A stretch of 64,000 nt of DNA, taken from assembly GCA_013239625.1 (NCBI GenBank), contig MU057352.1, positions 32,247,277 through 32,311,276 of the forward strand. Reading direction: 5' to 3'. The notes beneath the pieces are model-generated. The model did no database searches. It was not told the DNA's origin and saw only the letters and a list, made by a program, of their open reading frames with translations. Positions 17,352-36,920 of the stretch are shown here, piece after piece; position 1 is the first letter of the stretch; the number at the start of each line of letters is the position of its first letter. The DNA is from Lama guanicoe (lineage: Eukaryota). The position numbers were made by a program, and so were the translations under genes.

Positions 17352-17652
17352 TCCCACCATGATCACCACNNNNNNNNNNNNNNNNNNNNNNNNNNNNNNN
17401 NNNNNNNNNNNNNNNNNNNNNNNNNNNNNNNNNNNNNNNNNNNNNNNNNNNNNNNNNNNNNNNNNNNNNNNNNNNNNNNNNNNNNNNNNNNNNNNNNNNN
17501 NNNNNNNNNNNNNNNNNNNNNNNNNNNNNNNNNNNNNNNACCATCGGCACCATCAGCACCATCACCACCACCACCATCACCATCAGCACCATCACCACCA
17601 TCACCTTCAGCACCATCAGCACCGTCACCATCAGCACCATCACCACCATCAG
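17352..17652. repeat. (CAC/CAT/CAG)n imperfect trinucleotide repeat spanning the gap
   Basis: caccatcagcaccatcaccaccac units after the gap; a short caccatgatcaccac before it. Confidence 0.9.
17370..17539. other. Assembly gap (170 N)
   Basis: Run of n characters flanked by CAC/CAT repeat. Confidence 1.
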
Positions 17653-17659
17653 AACCAGT

Positions 17660-17825
17660 CACTGTGCTAAGTGCTTCCCATGCAACCCTCTGAGGTGTCA
17701 CTGTTATGTATTTCACAGAAAGGGAAGTGAGGAGCAGAGATAAAGCAAAGTGCTCAGTCACACACAGCAGTCACTGGCGGAGCTGGGATTAGAACCCAGT
17801 CTGTCTGACTCCAGGGACCGTCCTC
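17660..17825 (-). mobile_element. MIR SINE
   Basis: 'tgtgctaagtgct...tttcacagaaagggaagtgagg...ggagctgggattagaacccagtctgtctgactcca' is the reverse MIR core. Confidence 0.75.
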
Positions 17826-24849: not shown

Positions 24850-25210
24850 TCAGCTGCAGCTGCCATAACAGGCAGCACGGGCCGGGCGGCCCACACGTGG
24901 AGAAGCCTTCTCCCCCGTCCTGGAGGCCCAAGTCCGAGACGGAGGTGTCGGCAGGGCTGGCTCCTCCCGAGGCCTCTCCTGGACAGTGGACCACCATTTG
25001 CTCCCTGCGTCCTCAACGTGCTCGCCCCCCGTGGGAGTCTGCATCCTGATCCCACTGAATCAGGACACCAGTCACGCTGAATGAGAGTTCACCCCAGAGA
25101 CACTTCACCTTAATCACCTCTTTGAAGGCCCCATCGTCAAACAGTCACCTTCTGAAGTCCTGGGGTGAGACTTCCAACACACAAATCTGAGGGGAACAGA
25201 ATTTAGTGGG
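24850..25210 (-). mobile_element. MLT1 (ERVL-MaLR) solo LTR, reverse orientation
   Basis: 'gctgccataaca...ctggaggcccaagtccgaga..gtgtcggcagggctgg' and 'ccttaatcacctctttgaaggcccc..caaacagtcaccttctgaagtcctgggg'. Confidence 0.8.
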
Positions 25211-27584
25211 TGTCGGGCCTCGGGCTGTGGGTTTGTGACTTCTGGGACTGCCGGCTCCCCCCCTGCATCCCACTCAGCGGCCGCCCACTACGGACCGAGT
25301 GGCTGCTAGCTGGGCTTACGTGATGCTTCTTACTCTGCGGGTCCTGCAAAGGCCTACACGACTCTCCCACAGAAAGGACCTCCTGCCGGGACCGGGGGTC
25401 TCAGGGCCAGCCTCCCACTGCAGCGCTCTTGACCAGGGTGGTAAGGCGGGTGGTGTTGAGGGGACAAGCCCGGCTGCTCTGCCTATCCTCTGCAAGCCTG
25501 TAAAGCAGCTAACGTGACGGTTTTTTCCACGTTAAGCTGTTTCCTTGCAGGGGAGCCCCCTGGGCTGCCTGCCCCGCTGTTCACCAAGAGCAGATCTGCC
25601 CGACTCCTTGTCTGCGGCTCCTCCAGGCCAGGGACCTGGTCTTGCTCATCTGGGCTCAGACGGACGAGGCTCTGGCACTTGGTAAGGCAGCTTGATCTTG
25701 GAATCCTGAAACCGGGCCCCAAGCCCACCCCCAGCGCTCTCCACGACCCTGGACATCACTCACCGCTGTCGCCCCAATGCCACCAGCTCTCGGGTCTGCC
25801 ACTGGTACAAGGGTATGGTGGGTGGCCTGGGGTCTCTTCTGGCTCTGATGGAAGGCATCAACCCCCCTCCAGCCTGTCCCTCTGGAACACAGAGGACTTG
25901 TGAGCAACAAGGCAGGCCAGAGAAAGGTGGTCACTGACGCCTTCCAGATGCCCCAAGTAGCACCCTTGACATCGCCCCCCTGGGCCCTTCTGCACACAGG
26001 TCACTGCTGCCCTGCCCCCTCCCCCTAAGCCCTCCCGGGACCCTGTCACTCAGCCTCCACAGGCTCTCCTCACTGCTGCCCTGTCCTGACTCTCACACCG
26101 GAGTCCTCAGAGCCCAGTCCTATGTCCCCTGCCCTCCTGAGGCACACAGCCCCCAGAGCAATGTGGCCCCACACCGCCTTTTGACCCCCAGGCTGCCGGA
26201 GCCCCACTGGGCCCCCGGACCTCGCACAGGACAGCAACTGCCCTCACTACCCTCCCCTTCCCACATCCACCATCCTCCAGTCACCCGGCTCAGACTCTGG
26301 GCAGAGAGCACGGCCGTGCAGTGGCCAGGGAGGAAAGTCCAGCTGGACCCCACTCAAAACTCAGACATCCTCCCCGCCGCCTTACCTCACATGCTCACTG
26401 GGAACCTTCCACCCTCAGAAGCTCTGATTCTGACCGGCTCCTGTTTAAACCAAGAGCACAGCCTCCTTCTTAATGGGTCTCCAGGCCCCTTACCCCACAG
26501 CCAGGAGAAGGAGCTTCCAGAACCCCAGGTCGGCCAGCAGCAGAGCTGACCTCTGCCCTCGCTGCCGCCCCCCGCCCCGAGCTCCCTGGTGCACCCTCGG
26601 CCCAGCGGCCTGACTGCAGGCACCCCATCCCAGTCACGCTCCTGCCCACCCTCCGCACTGGAAGCACAGGACTCTGGCCTCCAAGGGCAAAGGGCGCCGG
26701 GGCTGCGGAGGCAGTCACTCCCCTGCACCCTCCGTTCTCAGCACAGGCCCAGCCCGGAGGAGACCCCCAATAGGTATTACGGAGCCGTCCAGGGTCAGGG
26801 CTCAGAGTGGGACCAGGGTCAGAGGTCAGGGCTCAGCGTGGGACCCCAGTAGGTGCTGACCAGGGTTAGCCTGTAACACAGGAAAGCAGCGTTCACTGCC
26901 GGGAGAGAGGTGAGTGTCCACTGCAGCGGCATCTTTAGTGGACGAGCAGGGTCCATCCCTTCCACCTGGAGCAAAGGCCTAGGAAGACTTCTCAGAGGCG
27001 GCACCGAGACGGACCTGGGCTTTGCTGGGCAGAAGGACAGGCCACCATGGTGAACACATGGTGCCACATGGACCACAGGGGCAAGGAGGCTGGAAGGGAG
27101 CTGGCCGGGCAGCTAATGAGTTCGGGCTTTCTTTTGTGGACAAAGAGTTACTGACAGGCTGCCGGCTCCGCGGTAAACAGCGAAACCAGGAAGCGCCCCT
27201 CTCGCCACGTCAGGCCCACGCTGAGCTCGGCCCCCACGGTGCTGGGCTGCCCCGGGAGCCCTAGACCATCACGCTGCCCAGTTCTTTGGCCTCCCACTTC
27301 TGGAAAAGGCTTTTAACATGAGTTCGGAGAAGGAGGCAGAGGGGAGGCGGAGGCCCAGGGCGAGGAGGACCTCGAGGGCCGCCCGAGCCGTGTGGCTGCA
27401 GGCCTAACGGGGCAGGGTTGGGCTGGCCCCAAGGGACCGTTCAGGGCCAGGAGGCCACAGGCGGGCGGATCTGAAAACCCAGGGAGGGCCCAGGGCTCTG
27501 CGCGGGGCTGAAGGCAGAGGCCCTGCCCACAAGAACAACATGGGTCTGTTTCATCCGCTCGTCAGCATCGCCCTCGTTACCAGC

Positions 27585-27655
27585 ACTGCTTTTTTGTTGT
27601 TATTTTATGCTTATATAAGAAAAATACTTTTTTGAAGAAAATCAACAGGTACAAA
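27585..27655 (-). terminator. Candidate polyadenylation region for the nested gene's terminal exon
   Basis: AT-rich island about 550 nt after the stop, with TGTA (27650-27653) upstream of a variant CATAAA hexamer (27604-27609) on the minus strand. No canonical AATAAA. Confidence 0.35.
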
Positions 27656-28164
27656 ACGGCATCCTGCCCTGTCCACTACCAAGGAGCAGGCGCACACGCG
27701 TGTGGGTGTGTGTCCAACTGCAGATACAAAACCAAGAGCCATGACTCCAGCCCAGCCCCCGAGTCCATACACCCATGGAGAAGGAGAGGCTTCCAGGAGT
27801 CACTTCGGGGCACACGCTGGGGCCCAGCCAGCCACATTTCCAGGGTCCCAGCACCCAAGGCAGACGTTTGGGGGTGCTGCACCCCACGTGCATCTTCCCG
27901 CAGCAACACTAGCGGGCATCTGCGGAGTGGGCCGTGCTCTGTGCTCCAGGGCGCTCGCCCCGCGGGTCAGAGAGCAGCCCAGGAGTAGAGGTGCGCTCTG
28001 CCCTGTCCAACCCACCATCCCTGCTGTCCGAGCAGACTTCGGCCCGGGCCCCCACACGCTGGCTCTCAGAGGCCCTTCCACGCGCGTGTAGTGAGCCCCA
28101 CAGACAGGGGCAGCATTGGAAGGGGCTGTCCTGTGTCCTCTCTGGCTGCATGGAGGTGCAGACT

Positions 28165-28745
28165 CTAGACCTCCTCCTCCACCTTCAGGATCATCCCTGA
28201 GAAGACTTCCAGGCCCGTGGGGGTGCCCTGGGGGGCTCCATCCGGCCCACAGGCTGTTCCGCCCCCAAGGGGGCCGTCAGGGATGGGGGGCGAGGCACCC
28301 AGGGCCGGGCGGGCCTCCACCAGCCTCTCCAGCGTTCGGTTGAGGGCCTCGACACCGTCGGCCAGCCTCTGGCTCTGCTCAGCCAGCCTCTGCAGCAGTG
28401 CATTCTGCTGGGCCATCAGCGTGCTCTGCTGCTGGGACCAGGAGCGCAGCACGGCACCCTGTCGCCGCTGGGAGTCCAGGAGCCTCCGCTCAAACTCTGA
28501 GGCCTCGGCCACCGCGGGCTTCCCCAAGGGCTGGGGTGCTACAGAGGTGGGTGGCGAGGGCCGGGAAGCCCCAGGGAATGCGGCCGCCGGGGGCGCTGAG
28601 GCTGGGGAGGCGGGTGGAGAGGGTGAGGAAGTGGCAGCAGGGTAGGCTCCTCGGAGGTCCAGGGGGTCGGCTTCGGGCAGGCTCGGCCCATCCAGTGTCC
28701 GCAGGGGCAGCCACAGGCAGCTGGGGGCCTCGTCCTCCTCGTCTG
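28165..28745 (-). CDS. Nested Myb/SANT-like protein, terminal coding exon (acidic/Pro-rich linker, PLDLR, coiled coil, ...MILKVEEEV stop)
   Basis: Acceptor gtctccccctgctag|cag| (NAGNAG, both phase 1) is in frame with the 35133 donor. 581 nt open to TAG. Heptad-rich EFERRLLDSQRRQ...LADGVEALNRTLERLVEA, typical of MSANTD/NAIF1-type C-termini. CpG-rich. Confidence 0.78.
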
Positions 28746-28974
28746 CTAGCAGGGGGAGACAGGAAACGTGAGCCCCATGGCCCAGGACTGGGAGGGCCAG
28801 GAGGGGCCACTCGCAGACGGTCCTGCACGTGCAGATATGGGGGTCTCGAGGGGCCCCTCTGTGGTGGCCAGCTGCACCCTCACCAGGACACCAAAGAGAG
28901 GGCGAAAGACTTCCTCCAGTAACGCCGAGACTGAAACTCAACCTGGCGGCTCCCAAGCCGGAATGCTACCACCA

Positions 28975-29255
28975 TGCTGCCATCTGTCTGTCCACCAGCC
29001 CACCTACACACGTCCACATGCTCATCCGTCCCCTCAGCTCGCTGCCCATCCGTTTGTTCACCAAGCATCCATCCAACCTACCCATCCCCTCCTTCCTTTC
29101 ATCCTTCCTTACATCCATCCGTCCATCCATCTGTTCATCTCTCAGCCAACCATCCTCAATCCATTCATCCTCATCCACTGTCTATCCATCCTTGATCCAC
29201 CCATCCATCATTCACCTCTGTCCATCCAGCCACGCGCCCATCCACCTACTTGTGT
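28975..29255. repeat. Degenerate (CCAT/TCCA)n simple repeat
   Basis: catccatccgtccatccatc-type units. Confidence 0.85.
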
Positions 29256-29825
29256 ATATACCTCCCAGCCCTCAGTCCCCCCACCCACCACCCAGCGGAC
29301 GTCCTGGAGGGATGAGTGGGTGCACATGGAAGCAGAACTTCCCTGGGGCGGCAGGAAGGGCCAGGATTTGTAGTCCGACAAACTGGGCCCCAATGCCAGG
29401 CTGTGACCTGGGAAAGCCCTTCTCTTCTCGGGGCCTCAATCCCCTAATCTGCAAATGGACAGTCTGGCTGAGGGGCTGCTAACCTTCCAACTGTCTGCGG
29501 GTGAAGGGTAAGCCAGCCCAGGACCCAGGGAGACCTCGCCAGGCCTGAGACACGGGCTGCGCTGGCACCCCGTCTCACTAGGCATTTCCCGACGTGCTGC
29601 ATGGAAGTGGAGGCAGGTCGAGGACTTCACACTGTGGCAGTAACTTTGACTGTACATCCTGGGTCTGAGCCCCCACCCAGCTCATCTATGGCACAGGGGT
29701 TCCTGCTTTGGACAGGAAAGGGGTGATGACAGCATCACCCCAGAGGACGGGGCCACAGGCCCCCGGGGAAGCGGGCCAGGGTTCTGAGCCCAATGCGTCC
29801 AAGGGCGCAGGTGGCTGCCGGTGCT

Positions 29826-29882
29826 GCCTCCTCCTCCTTCTCCTCCTCTTCCTCCTCCTGTTCCTCTTCCTCCTCCTCCTCA
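29826..29882. repeat. (CCT/GAG)n low-complexity tract
   Basis: cctcctcctccttctcctcctcttcctcc... Confidence 0.85.
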
Positions 29883-31623
29883 TGGTCACACCCTCCTCTG
29901 TGGTCCAGGAATCTGCGGTCCAGGCACCCACTGATCCTTCGGACTTGGCGGCCCTGGTGCTCTTGGAAGGAGCCACCCAGCCAGTACGTTGCTCCTTCTC
30001 GAGGTGAGATGAAGCTTTCTGGAGGTGAGGGCCCTTGGCAGGCACCACCGTTCGGAGAGTTCCCATTAGAGAGGCCAGGCCCTGGGCTTCCCATGAGTCT
30101 ACCTCGTTCGTCAGTTGCAACCTGTACCTTCACGCTGGGCGGCCCTAGAGGGACCACGCCTGACGCCCTCACATGCTGGCAGGTGGGGGCTGTGGCTAGG
30201 GCAGAGAGCCTGCAGCGGGCGTGAACAGACATCCTCCAGCCCTGCTTCTGCCCGATCCTGCAGGCAGGTCCCGCTTCCCCACTGGTGTGGCGTTCACCAG
30301 CTGCCAGTGAGGCCAGCCCCTGCCTCAGAAGTCTGATGGCCACCGACAGACAAAAGGGGAGGCCAACAGTGGGCCCAGCCTCCAACCTCAGACGATCTCG
30401 CAGAGTCTTGCGGCTGCCGGTCCCGCGTGCGCACTGCCCACCTGGCTCCCTGAGGGAGGGGAGGTGTGGGAAGGGAGCAGACGCGGTGCCAGGAGGGGGC
30501 CTGCCCTTTCCCACTGTTTGCCCCACCTACAGACCCTGCACGGTCCAGACCACCGCCCTGAGACCTCTCCTCCCCCCAGGGCAACTACAGTCCCCTTTGC
30601 CAGCACAGCTCTGATATCCTGAAGCCCCCACGGAACGAGGACCTGGTCCACATCTCTCCCCAGTCTCCACGCCACTCCCAACGGCACAGCCCCCACACTC
30701 TGCACTCCAGCCTGCGGTGTCCCGAGCTCACCTGGGCTGCCCCTCCTTTGGCCTCTGTCCTCTCCACCAGGACAACTCCTGCTTGGCGCTCCCCCAGGAA
30801 GCCTGCCCTGCCTCAGCCGGGCCAGGGCCCTCGTGTCACTGGACTGGACTGTCCACCCACCCCACCCCTAGGACGCACGCTCCCAGAGGAACAGGCTCTG
30901 CGGGGTCCATCTCTGCATGTCAGGGCGCAGCACAGAGCAGAGGGCCAGTGAGCAGTAGGGAGCCAGCAGAGGGTGGTTGCTGACCCCTCGATGGACGTAG
31001 GCCTGAGCCCACCAGGGGTTCCGGTACTGAACGTGGGTCAAGAGGCCCGTCATCGATCCCCGAGGCTGCCCTTGGCCTCGTATCAAACAAATAAAGGTCT
31101 GATCTTGTCCTCACTGAGCCAACTTGTCCCAAGTCAAGTTCTGCCTGCTCCAACCTGGGGGGGAGGCCCCCCCAGCTCCAGCCCAGGGCCAGACCACGGG
31201 CAGACATGGAGCCACACCTGGCCCAGTGGCAGGTGGAGGCGCAGGAGGCCAGGCGGCCCTCTCTGCGGCCCTCTCCTCCAGGAAGGCAGCAGACGAGGGT
31301 AGACCCACCCAGCCTTCTGAGAAAAACGAGAGAAGCCATGGAACGTCCTGCAGGGGCAGCTCGGGGATGCGGCACAATCCTGGGAGCCCCGGCCACTCCC
31401 ACAGCTGGCCACGCACCCCTGTCCTCTCGCTTGGCAGAGCCAGCAGGCAGAGACCCCAGGCCGCCCCCTCGGTGGGGGTGCAAACCAGATGGGAGGCGGT
31501 GCTGACCGTCCTGGGCCCGCAGCCCCTTCCTGTCCGCTCCCCATAGCAGTCCGCCTGGGCTCAGAGAAGACCCTGCAGACCTGCCCCTCCCGGGCCACGG
31601 GCTGTCCCCTCACACTGACTTAC

Positions 31624-31706
31624 TTGGTGCCGGCTGGCTCCGGCCAGGAGCTCGCTGGCCGCCTCTGTGTGTGAGGACACAGCCTCAAGGCCGGCTTCAA
31701 TACTAT
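31624..31706 (-). CDS. TSNARE1: TSNARE1 SNARE-motif C-terminal exon, (D)SIEAGLEAVSSHTEAASELLAGASRHQ
   Basis: Acceptor cttgatttgcag| and donor |gtaagt. 83 nt, phase 1 to 0. G+AT restores the D of 'IDSIE'. Read manually; it is not in the ORF track. Confidence 0.95.
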
Positions 31707-34700
31707 CTGCAAATCAAGACAACAGAAGCAGTTACAGAGTGGGGACCCTGGGGTCACCCGAGGGCGAGCCTGGGGAGCCCAGCCTGGGGCCGCGGGGGGC
31801 GGAAGCAGACAGCATCTGACCCCCTGGTGGTCACTCGGAGGCCCAGGCAGGAAGCCCAGCCTTCAGAGAAGCAGAGGCGGCAAGGATAGAGCACCGGCCG
31901 GGCCGAGCTGTAGGGCAGGGAGCCTGGAAGCACCCCCTTGGGGCAGCAGCAGCCCACTCAAGACAGGGTGCGGGCCTGGCTCTGCTACAACTCTGCACCC
32001 TGGGGGCGACTGCACAGGCTCACAGAGCGGCTGTGAAGACAGCGTGACGGGGTCTGCGAACACCCTCCTCTGCGCGCTGGCCATGGGTGTCCGGGCCCTG
32101 ATCAGCCGGTTCTGACTACCGTGCGGGGCTGAGTGGGGGACCAGGGAATTCGCCTGGTAGGTGTGTCAACACAGCCCCCAAGATGTCACACCAGCAGCAC
32201 ACCTGAGCTGCTGACGAGGTCCAGGGGCTGCCCGCGGAAACCTGAAGATTTCGCTCAGCGATGCCAGCGGTTAAAAGGCAGCATCATGTAAACCATGCAC
32301 CAGACCCGTCCCCACCCCACCGCCGAGGGGCATGCAGGGTAGTGGGGAGTTAGGGCTGCGGCACTCGACCCTGCAAGGAACCGGGTTTGAATCCAGGTGA
32401 GGACCCCCCTGCGCAGTGTCTTCTACCAATGAATGGGAAAGAGCCCCGTGCCCGCAGATGAGCAGCTGAGAGCCCGCAGCCAGGGGCGCTGCCCTCAGCA
32501 CAGACCAGCTGCTGCCGCTGCACCAGACGCAGTAACACGTGAAATGAACTCTTCCAGGAAGAGCAGACACGCCTCCAAATTCACACATTTTCAGAGCTCT
32601 GGAGGCAGAAATGGCTGGATTCAAATCACTCCTCTTCCTGCAGCTGTGCACCTGGGCGCCGCCCGAGGCCTGAGGCCGGCAAGGTCCCCTCAAAGGCGGG
32701 AACCGCCCCGGCTCGGCGTCCTGAGGCCCCGTGGGTGTGCTCCCCACCAGGAGAGGGTGTGGGCGGGCCCTCCTGGAGCTGGGGCCTGCAGGGTGCCTTT
32801 GCCGCCTGCCAGGGGCGCAGGCCTCCCGTGGTGCCTCTCCAGCCAGCCTAGATGAGGAAGAAGGAACGCAGCTGCCCCGAGGCAGGACCAGCCCTGCGGG
32901 GGGTCGGGGGAGGGCACCCACCCAGGCCCCCGCCCCTGCCACCACCAACAACGTGACTAGGAGCTACCTTGTGCTCCAGACTCTGTCGGCAACAACCTGG
33001 CGGAGCCCCGACACAGAGAGAGGTGGCTGTGCCTGGCGGGCAGCAGTGTCTGGGCCAGCCGTGAGCTGGGGTCACACTCCTAGCTGGCTTTTCGCTCTGA
33101 CCTGCAACCACACACGCTCTGGGCTGCGCGGGGACCTGCCCTCAGACTGCCCAGCCCTGGTCTGCACCGAGTCGGCGCCCCGCGGCAGGGAGCCTGACTC
33201 TGATGGTAGCGTACATCCCAGAGGCAAGCGCCCCCGGCGGCCAAGGTGCACACAGCCCAGAGAACAAACGTCCTGTGGCCCCAGGGCTGGATCGCAGATC
33301 TGCTCAGCCCCCAGATCACACACGGCTCCACCCTGGGACACCGTACAAGCAGACCCCTGGCTCGTGGCCAGCGACCCTCTCCTGGGCCCTGGGGGCTGCC
33401 AGGCAAGCGGGGGCACCCCACCACACGGCCTATGGTGCTGACGCCTCATTGGCCGCGGGCCACCCCCTTCACCTCGTCATAAAGATTCCAGGTTGACCGG
33501 GGACAGCCCTGCAAAGCCCAGTCCAAGTGGGGGGAACCCAGGCACAGGCACCCCTGGGGGGCCCTACACGCGGCCAGCGGGCTTTCCTCAGCCCTACAGC
33601 CGGGAGATGCCCGTACGCCGGGATCGTGCCTCAGCCCCAGGCCAGTGCCGACCCAGAGGGCAGCGCTGGCGGGGCTGGGCCTCCAGCTGTGGTCTCCACC
33701 ATCACCCCCAAAACCAGGCGCTGCAGCCACTTCCCTGCTTGGCCTTAGCCTCACCCCACGTTGCTCTCACACATTTAACAAATCTCAGGACCCGTCGGCA
33801 CGGTGTCGGCCACTCCCCACAGAGCTCACAGCACTAAGGGACCAGCCGGTTGGCTGCCCTGATGGAGGAGAGCCCGGGAGGGGAGCCATGGGGTCTGGCG
33901 GAGGGGGCACTGGCCCACCAGGGTGGACAGGAAGCCTTCTGAGCCAAGCACCACACCCAGGGGACAAGCGCAGTCGCAAGCTCCCACCTCACTCCAGGGC
34001 TGGGGGCTCATGGGAAGGTCGGAGCACCCAGGGCCACACCCATGCTGCCCGCTGCCCGCCCTTCAGCACCCCAAAACCAGGTCTGGCTATGCCTGTAGGA
34101 GAGCGGGTGGCCTCCCCAGGACTAACAGGTGGGCCCCACCCCACCCCATCATTCAGGCCCACGACCAAGCCCAGCCCAGGGCACGGGCACGTCGGGGTCT
34201 GCCTGCATCTCTGACTGGCCCAGGCTTGCTCTGCACAGACCCCCCACTAGAAGGTCTGCTGGGGCCTCTGTTGGTGGCATCTGGGGCCTCTGCTTGTCCC
34301 CACGAGGCTGAGTCCTGCTGTCCACTCTGCAGCCCTCAAGAGGGAGGTGGTCCTGCTTCTGGCTTCATCCTCAGTCTTCCCAGCAGCTCCCCAGGAAGGG
34401 GTGGGGAAGGGTCCAGCAGGACTCAGCTCTGAGCTGTGGGCGGAGCCGCTGCATGCAGACAGCAGGTGAAGGGCGCTCCTGACGAGGTTCAGAGGTGTCT
34501 TGAGGAGGAGGACGAGGAGCAGGCGGAGCGGGCAGGAGGAGGCGCTGCAGGCGGCAGGAGTGAGCCAGCCCTGCCCCGGAGTCAGAGGCACTGTGCCACC
34601 CGCGTCTTCTTCACCAGGTACAGACCCTTCTGAAAAGGTGGGCCCTGGAGGTGGGCCCACGGGCTCCGAGGGGATCAGCCTGCCCTAGGAAGCTAAGAGC

Positions 34701-35132
34701 CTCCAGATAGCGCTCTGGCCTGGCCTGGTCTGGGGGCTGCGACCCGGGGAGAGGGGCCCCCACAATGAGGGGGTCAGAGGGAGGGTGCGGTCACCCCTAC
34801 TCCCTCCCCTACACCCAAGATAGGGCACACAGCGGGCAGGGAGCTGAGCTGAGCTGGGCTGGTGACGGCTTTCCACGAGCAGTCCAGCGATTCACCTGCA
34901 CCTCAGCTCCTGTGGGTTTCTGGAGGCTGGTGGCCGCACTGTCACATGGGACAACCCCAGATGCCCCCAAGCCCGGGCCAGGGCCGACCTGACTCAGCCT
35001 CAGCTCCTGCACTCCCTGGTTTTGAGCCTCCATGCCCCCATCTAGATGCCAAGGGGCCTCCGCTCTCCCCTAATCTTGCTCTCGGCGGTCATGCGCTGGA
35101 AGCCCCTTGCAGGCGGTGAAGGGACCACTTAC

Positions 35133-35538
35133 TTGGCAGCGGCTCTGCGGCCTGGCCCTCGCCCGGGGGGCCCGGGACTGCGAAGGTCTCGGCCACCATG
35201 CGCTCGACGGGCGTGAGCACGGGGCCAGGGGCCCGGGGCCGCTCGGCCAGCTTCCGGCGCACCACGCCGCGCAGGTCCCGCCACTTGTGCTTGACGTCGC
35301 CCAGGTCCCGGCGGCAGTAGCCCAGTGCGTTCACCGCCTGCAGGATGCGGCTCCACACGCGATGCTTCCGGGCGGGCGGGCCCCGCAGCGCCCCGAACAG
35401 CAGCGGGTAGTGGCGCGTGACCCTCTGCACCAGCACCTCTGTCTCCTGGGGGCTGAAGTTGGGCTTCCGGGTCTTGGTGCGGGAGTGGGAGCTCGGCCGC
35501 AGGGGCACGCAGCCCGGCCCGGACAGCAGGGCCGCCAT
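35133..35538 (-). CDS. Nested Myb/SANT-like DNA-binding protein, coding exon 1 (Myb_DNA-bind_5/MSANTD/NAIF1-like). The full exon, from the upstream acceptor, spans 35133-35591.
   Basis: Strong Kozak gccATGG at 35538. Encodes RKPNFSPQETEVLVQRV...LLFG...RVWSRILQAVNALGYCRRDLGDVKHKWRDLRGVVRRKL, with the F/W/W Myb-SANT pattern. CpG-rich. Donor A|gtaagt (phase 1); upstream acceptor cctttccag| at 35591. Confidence 0.88.
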
Positions 35539-36847
35539 GGCCGGCTCGGGGCTGGAGCTCCGCTGGCATGTGGCTTGGCTGCTTCTGGACCCTGGAAAGG
35601 CACCAGAGGCTGAGTGGGCAGCAGATGGGACGGGCCATGGAGAGCAGGGAACCCCCAGAATCCTGGTCCCAGGCCCCCACTGCCCCCTGGAGAGGGTACA
35701 GTGGCCCCAGCCCAACGTCCATCACCCTAGAAACACCCACATCAGGGGGCAGTGGGGTCCTGGCTCCTGGCTACTCTGGTCCCCAGGTGCCCACCCCTCC
35801 GCCGGGCCCCTACACGGTTGCAGCAGGTCAGCCCTCTCCACCTCCCCACCGGGAGACGATCCCTTCCTGATCGTCCAGGAGCAGGACTGAGTGACCATCT
35901 GTAGACACCGGGGCATCCATCTGGAGTGTACAAAGCATTTTGCACACACCGCCCCAAGACAGCCAGCCAGAGGTGGAGGGGGGGGTCCTGCAAGAGGTGC
36001 TGTGAAGGGGTGACGGGGCGGCCCCACTGGAGCTGCCCAGGCTGAGGAGCGGGATCCCGTGGGAGCGAGGAGAAGCCTGCCAGCGTCACGGCCCAACCCT
36101 GTCCAGTCGCCCTCCTAGGGCAGGGGGGCGGCTGGGCTGCCCGCCAGGGAACAGCACATGCCTGGACCTCAGAAGCTCCACGGCACCCAGGCTGAGAGGC
36201 GAGAGGCTTATTCACAGCCGCGGGGCCCCTGGTGAGGCAACAGCTCAGCCCGGGAACAGGTAGAGAGGCTGGGTGGGTGAGCCCTGGGGTCCTGGCCGGG
36301 AGCTGACTGTTGGCAAGTGGCTCTGGGGACCAGGAGCCACTCTTCTAGGCCAGAGGGTGGTGAGTTCCTGCTCGGGCGCCCAGGGCGCTCAGGAGAAGCC
36401 ATATGGCCGCAGGGTGTGGGCACCGGGCTGGTGGGGCGGAGGCTCTCACGTGGAAGGAACAGCAGGAACAACGGCTCGTCCTGCACAGCCCTGTCCCCAC
36501 CACCCACGTTTCCTGAGAAGTGGCTGACGTGGTGAATCAGCAGCAGGATCGGCACTCCACGGTGGTGCCACGTCCAGCGCCCTCCGCTGGGGCACCCACT
36601 GCAGTCTGACGCCCCCCAGACAGCTGGTCCTCACCCTGGGGAGCCCCTGGCTGAGGAGGAAGGCCCAGGGCAGGGGGCACACAGGCCAGCGCTCCTCAGT
36701 GAGGAGAAGGGGCGGGCCAACCTCTGGCCTGGGTCTCCCTTGCCCGGCCTTCCTGAGGGGCTGGGGAGACACTCAGACCCCAGAAGCCGCCCCAGCCCCA
36801 CACCGGGGGGAGGGGCAGGTGGCCTGACAGATGGCGTGGGTACCCAC

Positions 36848-36920
36848 CGATGGCGTCTCCTTGCTCTGACACCATGGAGGCCAAGTCCTTGATGATCTGG
36901 TTCACATCCAGCAGGTCGCT
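36848..36920 (-). CDS. TSNARE1: TSNARE1 SNARE-motif exon, SDLLDVNQIIKDLASMVSEQGDAI(G)
   Basis: Acceptor gtttccacag| and donor |gtgggt. 73 nt, phase 0 to 1. Contains the Qa zero-layer 'EQG'. Confidence 0.96.

What the first reader, a model, noticed from the sequence alone, without database searches (positions are those of the whole stretch)
28165..35591. Hidden same-strand gene inside TSNARE1: an intact 328-aa Myb/SANT plus coiled-coil protein whose intron skips a TSNARE1 exon
Seen: Kozak ATG at 35538, a 406-nt Myb/SANT coding segment ending A|gtaagt, and a phase-matched acceptor at 28745. These give 135+1+192=328 aa with no stop before ...LKVEEEV*. Both exons are CpG-rich, and the TSNARE1 SNARE exon at 31624-31706 lies inside the predicted intron. 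Known: an N-terminal Myb/SANT domain with a C-terminal coiled coil is the architecture of domesticated Harbinger-transposon DNA-binding proteins (NAIF1/MSANTD/MYPOP-like), not of a syntaxin. Inference: a separate nuclear protein is encoded interleaved with the SNARE gene, probably unannotated or merged into TSNARE1 isoform models.
Basis: partly seen in the sequence, partly recalled or inferred. Interest (0 to 1): 0.92.

Follow-up and report, generated by a model that had tools for sequence, protein, structure and literature searches.

The report
Second Myb module inside TSNARE1
The two exons are real and have been conserved from frogs to mammals, but they look like an alternative end of the TSNARE1 gene itself (a captured transposon DNA-binding protein) and not a separate hidden gene, and genome annotation pipelines already model them as TSNARE1 isoforms in other species.

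Summary
On the minus strand an ATG at 35538 opens a 406-nt Myb/SANT segment (Pfam PF13873, E=7e-20). It ends at a CAA|gtaagt donor (35133). A phase-matched acceptor at 28745 opens a 192-codon frame ending at TAG 28165.

The downstream frame is conserved in more than 25 protein clusters, from Xenopus to placentals. All indels are in frame, the stop is fixed, and the last 12 residues are nearly invariant.

A separate gene is not supported:
- The Myb exon is really 459 nt (35591-35133), phase 1-1, between SNARE exons 11 and 12.
- Its acceptor and the 17 codons upstream of the ATG are conserved as far as turtles.
- The ATG itself is replaced in about half of the species.
- No CpG island lies upstream.
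- Two spliced Logan contigs join exon 11 to this exon.

RefSeq and Ensembl models (elephant seal, meerkat, tortoise, marsupials, Xenopus) already carry exon 11 -> Myb2 -> coiled-coil exon as TSNARE1 isoforms.

The 28745 exon appears to be TSNARE1 "exon 13". After exon 12 it is read in another frame, so it codes in two frames.

No paper found describes this module.

The parts
36848..36920 (-). TSNARE1 SNARE-motif exon (human 'exon 11' equivalent), 73 nt. It ends in phase 1, four residues after the zero-layer Gln.
   Evidence: tblastn of sheep TSNARE1 P0040 residues 547-576 at 87% identity. The 73-nt size equals the human SNARE-core exon given in bioRxiv 10.1101/2021.02.09.430442.
35133..35591 (-). 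Second Myb/SANT exon ('Myb2'), 459 nt, phase 1-1. Acceptor ttccag|GG at 35591, donor CAA|gtaagt after 35133. It contains the non-conserved ATG at 35538.
   Evidence: Pfam PF13873 E=7e-20. Orthologues at 63-67 of 75 core residues identical as far as tortoise. Acceptor and pre-ATG codons conserved. Spliced to exon 11 in Logan contigs P0250 and P0257.
35536..35538 (-). In-exon ATG proposed as the start of a 328-aa protein. Present in this genome, horse, tamarin and some others, absent in about half of the orthologues.
31624..31706 (-). TSNARE1 SNARE-motif exon ('exon 12' equivalent), 83 nt, ends in phase 0. It is skipped in the Myb2 -> exon 13 form.
28165..28745 (-). Dual-frame exon ('exon 13' equivalent). 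After a phase-1 donor (Myb2) it encodes the conserved 192 residues: acidic patch, Pro/Ser linker, 68-residue helix, invariant C-terminus, stop at 28167-28165. After exon 12 (phase 0) it reads about 69 codons of a Pro/Arg-rich tail in another frame.
   Evidence: Conservation. Helix. Frame-0 reading joined to the exon-12 peptide in P0020, P0258 and P0044.
28742..28747 (-). Tandem NAGNAG acceptor (tag|cag|). Exon starts at 28745 or 28742 differ by one codon, giving Thr-Asp or Asn at the junction.
   Evidence: Mammalian models carry ..LPTDEE.. and the tortoise model carries ..LRNEEE...

Best explanation
The two segments are the retained coding exons of a Harbinger-transposon Myb-like (DNA-binding) gene. 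That gene sits in the intron that splits the SNARE motif of TSNARE1 and has been captured as an alternative 3' module of TSNARE1.

Proposed route: transcription starts at the TSNARE1 promoter. Exon 11 (phase 1) is spliced to the 459-nt Myb2 exon, and the Myb2 donor (phase 1) is spliced to the exon at 28745. Only in this arrangement is that exon read in the conserved frame.

Predicted product: the syntaxin-like N-terminal part and the N-terminal half of the SNARE motif (up to just past the zero layer), followed by a Myb/SANT trihelix domain with a basic TKTRKPNF stretch, an acidic patch, a Pro/Ser linker, a 68-residue helix and an invariant ..FSGMILKVEEE[VIL] C-terminus. It lacks SNARE layers +2 to +8 and the membrane anchor, so it cannot act as a fusogenic Qa-SNARE. 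It is most likely a DNA-binding and/or nuclear-targeted form.

The same Myb2 exon can also be included as an in-frame cassette (11 -> Myb2 -> 12).

The 28745 exon appears to be shared with the SNARE isoforms that lack the TM domain. These reach it from exon 12 and read it out of frame.

Shown: the anatomy, the Pfam membership, deep conservation of both exons in the stated frame, the non-conserved ATG, and the exon 11 -> Myb2 splice in RNA-type contigs of another mammal.

Inferred: use of the Myb2 -> 28745 junction in vivo, the nuclear or DNA-binding role, coiled-coil pairing, and the Harbinger origin of the helix exon.
For: 1. Myb2 is PF13873 at 71 bits.
2. The 192-codon frame is intact, with in-frame indels only and a fixed stop, in more than 25 clusters. 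The helix is 48-58 of 68 identical in mammals, 37/68 in tortoise and 36/68 in Xenopus. The last 12 residues are 10-12 of 12 identical throughout. DNA evolving without constraint would not be expected to keep an open frame with in-frame indels only between frog and mammal, so this frame must be translated. That requires a phase-1 donor upstream.
3. The Myb2 exon is phase 1-1 and in frame with exon 11. Its acceptor and the 17 pre-ATG codons are conserved as far as turtles, while the ATG is not.
4. Logan spliced contigs P0250 (262 aa) and P0257 (432 aa, from a 2,067-nt contig) read exons 7-11 directly into Myb2.
5. Independent annotation pipelines model exon 11 -> Myb2 -> coiled-coil exon in elephant seal (905 aa), meerkat (798 aa), tortoise (593 aa), Tasmanian devil, Dromiciops and Xenopus laevis.
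6. No CpG island lies upstream of the exon.
7. AlphaFold2 gives a single helix at residues 77-144 with pLDDT above 90.
8. Two RNA runs from two studies hold 41% of the sampled words of the Myb2 exon.
Against:
- The only spliced RNA-type contig that continues past Myb2 (P0257) goes to exon 12, not to the 28745 exon.
- Gene models are computational and are partly drawn to conserved ORFs. The Mesoplodon model P0044 invents a frame switch inside the exon.
- Exon 11 also ends in phase 1, so a direct 11 -> 28745 splice would read the same conserved frame without Myb2.
- This genome does have a good-context ATG, so a shorter 328-aa product from an internal start cannot be excluded here.
- Manis javanica carries two frameshifts in the helix exon (P0258, P0259), so constraint is not universal.
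- Homology of the helix tail to other Myb_DNA-bind_5 proteins is weak: hhalign probability 80% to a sturgeon protein, and Atlas score 0.80 to NAIF1-type clusters.
Confidence: 0.62

Rival explanations
1. A separate nested gene is transcribed from its own promoter in the intron upstream of 35591. It is translated from ATG 35538 and spliced 35133 -> 28745, giving a stand-alone 328-aa NAIF1-like nuclear protein.
For: A good-context ATG with an open frame in this genome. The ATG is also present in horse, tamarin and some Logan ORFs. Ensembl has a stand-alone 325-aa model in the Pinta tortoise, A0A8C0ITF8. The Myb plus helix architecture is a complete unit on its own.
Against: The ATG is replaced by V, A, E or T in about half of the orthologues, and those have no other Met before the Myb domain. 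The 17 codons upstream of the ATG and the acceptor are conserved as far as turtles. CpG o/e is 0.09 just upstream. Spliced contigs enter the exon from exon 11. No Logan-derived protein of about 330 aa with both parts was found in two length-appropriate searches. The tortoise model starts at a Met inside a turtle-specific insertion.
Confidence: 0.13
2. Myb2 is used only as an in-frame cassette exon (11 -> Myb2 -> 12) that interrupts the SNARE motif. The conserved frame of the 28745 exon is reached in another way, for example by a direct 11 -> 28745 splice.
For: P0257 shows 11 -> Myb2 -> 12 in an RNA-type contig. Horse, lynx and monk-seal models use the cassette form. Exon 11 ends in phase 1, so 11 -> 28745 would also give the conserved frame.
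Against: No model or contig with 11 -> 28745 was seen. Myb2 and the helix exon are conserved together from Xenopus to mammals. Other Myb_DNA-bind_5 proteins show a Myb domain followed by a C-terminal helix. Six species' models join Myb2 to the helix exon.
Confidence: 0.17
3. The module is a decaying transposon relic that is no longer translated. The open frames persist through GC-rich composition and overlap with the functional frame-0 tail of TSNARE1.
For: In about 70% GC DNA a 192-codon open frame has roughly a 2-3% chance per frame (my estimate from base composition). Manis javanica has frameshifts. The exon is in any case used by the TSNARE1 isoforms that lack the TM domain.
Against: The frame-0 tail covers only the first ~69 codons, yet the strongest conservation is in the helix and the last 12 codons, beyond that stop. 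Conservation reaches Xenopus, with in-frame indels only.
Confidence: 0.04

Closest known systems
TSNARE1 (tSNARE1/STX20), the Harbinger-derived Myb-like plus Qa-SNARE fusion gene (Smith et al. 2012, as cited in bioRxiv 10.1101/2021.02.09.430442; PMC9392472; PMC13639004)
   Same: Same locus and strand. The flanking exons are TSNARE1 SNARE-motif exons. The 28745 exon occupies the position of the 'exon 13' that the paper says encodes the C-terminus without a TM domain in the major human brain isoforms. The Myb domain belongs to the same Pfam family as TSNARE1's N-terminal Myb-like domain, at about 63-69% identity.
   Different: The literature I could read describes one Myb-like domain, N-terminal (human exon 4), and four isoforms that all carry a full SNARE motif. 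This module is a second Myb exon located inside the SNARE motif, plus a different reading frame of the terminal exon. The resulting product loses the C-terminal half of the SNARE motif.
NAIF1 and MSANTD3/MSANTD4, stand-alone domesticated Harbinger Myb-like genes (PMC9392472)
   Same: An N-terminal Myb/SANT trihelix of the PF13873 type followed by a low-complexity region and a C-terminal helix. Vertebrate-wide conservation. Atlas features place the helix exon nearest to NAIF1-type PF13873 clusters, with score 0.80, which is a lead only.
   Different: Those are independent genes with their own promoters and start codons. Here there is no conserved start codon and the exon is spliced from TSNARE1 exon 11. 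Sequence identity to those families was not measured here.
Dual-coding (overprinted) alternative exons, where one exon is read in two frames by alternative splicing
   Same: The 28745 exon is entered in phase 0 from exon 12 and in phase 1 from Myb2, giving two different peptides from the same bases. Both readings occur in database proteins of other species.
   Different: Only the Myb2-linked frame shows deep conservation along its whole length. The other frame is short and Pro/Arg-rich. Selection on it could not be tested without orthologous DNA.

Membership tests
Pfam PF13873 Myb_DNA-bind_5 (Myb/SANT-like DNA-binding domain; the Harbinger Myb-like, NAIF1 and TSNARE1 type) | Match to the family HMM above the curated gathering score over most of the model | tested here: met
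   71.2 bits against a 21.7 cut-off, E=7.1e-20. Residues 24-98 match model positions 1-77 of 78.
Domesticated Harbinger Myb-like protein (NAIF1/MSANTD-like stand-alone gene) | Own transcription unit with a conserved initiator codon upstream of the Myb domain | tested here: not met
   ATG 35538 is not conserved. The pre-ATG codons and the acceptor are conserved. Entry from exon 11 is seen in spliced contigs. No CpG island upstream.
Domesticated Harbinger Myb-like protein (NAIF1/MSANTD-like stand-alone gene) | Fixed orthologous position and purifying selection across vertebrates, in contrast to mobile copies | tested here: met
   The same position between SNARE exons 11 and 12 appears in models from Xenopus, turtles, marsupials and placentals. 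Open frames with in-frame indels only. dN/dS itself was not computed because no orthologous DNA was available.
Domesticated Harbinger Myb-like protein (NAIF1/MSANTD-like stand-alone gene) | Descent from a Harbinger Myb-like ORF, shown by grouping with transposon-borne copies | tested here: inconclusive
   Origin is taken from the literature for TSNARE1. My tree separates the Myb1 and Myb2 clades but leaves turtles and the outgroups unresolved. The helix tail matches a sturgeon Myb protein tail only weakly, at hhalign probability 80%.
TSNARE1 exon (alternative isoform of the known gene) | Same strand, in-phase splice sites, and a junction with neighbouring TSNARE1 exons in RNA | tested here: met
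   Phase 1-1 exon between exons 11 and 12. Exon 11 -> Myb2 and Myb2 -> exon 12 are seen in Logan contigs P0250 and P0257 from another mammal.
TSNARE1 exon (alternative isoform of the known gene) | Myb2 -> 28745 junction observed in RNA | not testable with these tools
Only gene models carry this junction.
Coiled-coil oligomerisation domain | Long amphipathic helix with a heptad pattern, and self-association | tested here: inconclusive
   Helix 77-144 at pLDDT above 90. The best heptad register has 12 of 20 hydrophobic a/d positions, with Gln at others. The homodimer prediction gave no verdict, score 0.16.

The most novel reading that the evidence does not exclude
TSNARE1 is a two-product locus. 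Besides the endosomal SNARE isoforms, it has encoded since before the frog-mammal split an isoform that ends in a complete Harbinger Myb-like protein (Myb2 plus helix plus the invariant FSGMILKVEEE tail). This isoform acts in the nucleus or on DNA. Myb2 plus helix would be the original captured transposon gene. The well-known N-terminal Myb-like domain would be a later copy. The tail of the major brain isoforms that lack the TM domain would be an out-of-frame reading of the transposon gene's last exon.
Probability: 0.3. Interest if true: 0.65.

Novelty: new member of a known kind. Interest (0 to 1): 0.42.

Why it matters

A second Myb/SANT module with its own helix and invariant C-terminus, conserved from Xenopus to mammals, suggests the locus has kept a DNA-binding or nuclear product under selection. 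That product replaces the C-terminal half of the SNARE motif.

This would change three things:
- how isoform-level expression and variant effects at the locus are read;
- how the tail of the isoforms lacking a TM domain is understood, since it reads the same bases in another frame;
- how the Harbinger insertion into the ancestral syntaxin is reconstructed.

For annotation, it argues for treating these exons as a TSNARE1 isoform and against calling a new gene.

Tried and rejected
- **Read laying.** Sent window:31400-37399 with runs X1, X2, X23 and X24. Local blast was run on the pieces 1-31606 and 31653-64000.
- **The look-up of encoding contigs.** No orthologous DNA could be fetched, so no dN/dS or codon-position analysis was done.
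- **Complex prediction.** Homodimer of residues 75-192 of the helix exon. No verdict (score 0.16). This is evidence neither for nor against pairing.
- **Joined spliced model.** The 328-aa model was never built or searched.
- **PDB sequence search with the Myb exon.** No hit.
- **hhalign of the helix-exon profile.** Against P0074 it was not significant. Against P0079 it gave only 80% probability. The first attempts were uninformative because alignment A1 contained Myb domains.
- **Myb1 versus Myb2 tree.** Two clades with moderate support, with turtles and outgroups unresolved and long branches. The timing of the duplication was not settled.
- **TM exon and poly(A) signal.** Neither the TM exon (exon 14) nor a canonical poly(A) signal was found downstream of 28165.
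- **Paper searches.** Nothing on a second Myb domain, the helix module or an MSANTD-type name. Smith et al. 2012 and the J Neurosci version of Plooster et al. are not held.
- **Unnamed Logan and ENA proteins.** Those with many members, which might come from primates, were not followed to their contigs. No human sequence was sought or compared.
Full report
**1. Observation**

On the minus strand the stated features are all present.
- ATG at 35538 in the context gccATGg.
- An open 406-nt segment ending CAA|gtaagt, with the last exon base at 35133.
- A pyrimidine tract and a tandem acceptor tag|cag|, giving exon starts at 28745 or 28742.
- A frame of 192 codons ending at TAG 28167-28165.

The first segment is a clear Myb/SANT domain: PF13873, 71.2 bits against a 21.7 cut-off. 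The second has no Pfam match. AlphaFold2, run on a 17-sequence alignment, gives disorder, one helix at residues 77-144 with pLDDT above 90, then a disordered tail.

The joined 328-aa model was not built or searched. Each exon was handled by reference.

**2. Where it sits**

The flanking exons are TSNARE1 SNARE-motif exons.
- A 73-nt exon at 36920-36848 ends in phase 1, four residues after the zero-layer Gln.
- An 83-nt exon at 31706-31624 ends in phase 0.
- Further TSNARE1 exons lie upstream at about 57.8, 55.6, 55.05 and 47.9 kb.

The Myb exon is therefore a second Myb exon inside the SNARE motif. It is not the N-terminal Myb-like exon (human exon 4) described in bioRxiv 10.1101/2021.02.09.430442. 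That N-terminal exon was not found in this window. The only strong match of the sheep N-terminal Myb region in the window is Myb2 itself, at 54% identity.

**3.

The frame is open upstream of the ATG. A good acceptor (ttccag|GG) at 35591 makes a 459-nt exon of phase 1-1, in frame with exon 11.

In the alignment of orthologous ORFs and models:
- The translated acceptor region and the next 17 codons (motif ..C..SSSPEPA..) are conserved in carnivores, horse, a tamarin, marsupials and turtles.
- The ATG is V, A, E or T in about half of them. Those species have no other Met before the domain.

CpG enrichment is limited to the coding part. CpG o/e is 0.99 at 35200-35400 and 0.09 at 35600-35800.

**4. 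Conservation of the downstream frame**

The 192-codon frame has full-length matches at 56-77% identity in many Logan and ENA ORFs and in named proteins of African elephant, giant pangolin and blue whale.

Conservation begins at the acceptor and ends at the same stop, and all indels are in frame. Identity to the window by region:

| Region | Placental mammals | Marsupials | Tortoise | Xenopus |
|---|---|---|---|---|
| Helix (68 residues) | 48-58 | 49-51 | 37 | 36 |
| Last 12 residues | 10-12 | 11 | 11 | 11 |

This is strong evidence that this frame is translated. The frame needs a phase-1 donor upstream.

One lineage shows decay. Manis javanica has two frameshifts, seen in a RefSeq model and in a Logan ORF.

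**5. What other genomes' models and RNA-type contigs show**

A search of 1.84 billion representatives with the Myb exon, plus cluster look-ups, gave three kinds of result.

- northern elephant seal XP_045751734 (905 aa; named isoform X7 and X1)
- meerkat A0A673VPV9 (798 aa)
- Pinta tortoise XP_074919392 (isoform X3, 593 aa)
- Tasmanian devil (448 aa)
- Dromiciops XP_043847376 (409 aa)
- Xenopus laevis OCT77225 (441 aa, partial)

See for these sequences.

Models using Myb2 as a cassette between exons 11 and 12: horse, lynx and monk seal.

One Ensembl tortoise model (325 aa) stands alone.

Two Logan proteins, P0250 and P0257, come from contigs of 1.6-2.1 kb. They run through exons 7-11 into Myb2, and P0257 continues into exon 12. 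The same exons are spread over more than 20 kb in this window (57806 to 35133), so I take these contigs to be spliced RNA. They are the only RNA-type evidence I obtained. They support entry from exon 11. They show the cassette form, not the Myb2 -> 28745 form.

**6. Two frames in one exon**

From exon 12 (phase 0) the 28745 exon reads about 69 codons of a Pro/Arg-rich tail in another frame. That reading, joined to the exon-12 peptide, occurs in a MetaClust protein, a Manis javanica RefSeq model and the Mesoplodon model. The Mesoplodon model then jumps into the conserved frame.

By position this is the 'exon 13' that, according to the paper, gives the C-terminus without a TM domain in about 93-97% of human cortical TSNARE1 mRNA. 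I did not compare it with human sequence, so the equation is an inference.

**7. Reads**

The look-up of sequencing runs on the Myb2 exon found:
- runs of one organism holding 0.88-1.00 of the sampled words (kind not stated);
- two RNA runs (reproductive-system metatranscriptome and transcriptome, two studies) holding 0.41.

**8. Reading**

The best-supported account is a captured Harbinger Myb-like gene serving as an alternative 3' module of TSNARE1. It is entered from exon 11 and read Myb2 -> 28745 in the conserved frame.

The product keeps the syntaxin-like N-terminal part and the SNARE motif only up to about layer +1. It then carries the Myb/SANT domain, a helix and an invariant C-terminus. 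It cannot be a fusogenic SNARE. A DNA-binding or nuclear role is inferred from the domain family, not shown.

Evidence on the helix and its relatives:
- Helix self-association was not supported or refuted.
- The helix shows weak similarity to the tail of a sturgeon Myb_DNA-bind_5 protein, at hhalign probability 80%.
- Atlas features are nearest to NAIF1-type clusters, at score 0.80.

These are leads, not tests.

The Myb tree separates the N-terminal (Myb1) and internal (Myb2) clades but does not date the duplication.

**9. Novelty**

Annotation pipelines already hold this product as TSNARE1 isoforms in several species, so it is not hidden in that sense.

The papers I could search describe one Myb-like domain and four SNARE-bearing isoforms, and none mentions this module. 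Smith et al. 2012 could not be read.

I rate it as a new member of a known kind: a further domesticated Harbinger Myb-like unit within a gene already known to derive from Harbinger. The two-frame terminal exon adds a modest twist.

Noticed in passing
window 57806-57717, 55651-55574, 55088-55020, 48019-47855 (minus strand): Four further TSNARE1 coding exons (Habc-to-SNARE linker region) match sheep TSNARE1 residues 425-552 at 77-87% identity. The N-terminal Myb exon and earlier exons were not found in the window.
   Followed up: partly
window about 30330-30640 (minus strand): The tail that follows exon 12 in the spliced Logan contig P0257, and part of the horse model's tail, match here at 57% over 30 residues. 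A further alternative exon may lie between exon 12 and the 28745 exon.
   Followed up: partly
window 25000-28165 (minus strand): No AATAAA or ATTAAA within 3.1 kb downstream of the stop at 28165, and no TM-anchor exon (human exon 14 equivalent) was detected anywhere downstream in the window. The 3' end of transcripts using the 28745 exon is therefore undefined here.
   Followed up: partly
window 17370-17539 and about 17540-17660: A 170-base run of N (left as it is), flanked by a short-period repeat that translates as a Val/Met/Leu-rich run on the minus strand.
   Followed up: no
proteins P0258 and P0259 (Manis javanica), P0233 and P0034: The Malayan pangolin orthologue has two frame changes in the helix exon, and its Myb2 exon carries several radical substitutions and an altered donor region. 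This looks like lineage-specific decay. Another pangolin-like ORF (P0010) and the giant pangolin (P0007) keep the frame.
   Followed up: partly
protein P0044 (Mesoplodon densirostris XP_059971724): This RefSeq model enters the 28745-equivalent exon from exon 12 in the short frame. It then switches into the conserved frame through an internal 'intron'. This is probably an annotation artefact caused by the conserved ORF.
   Followed up: no
window 28742-28747 (minus strand): A NAGNAG tandem acceptor. Mammalian models use the upstream AG (Thr-Asp) and the tortoise model has the Asn form. One-codon alternative splicing is possible.
   Followed up: no
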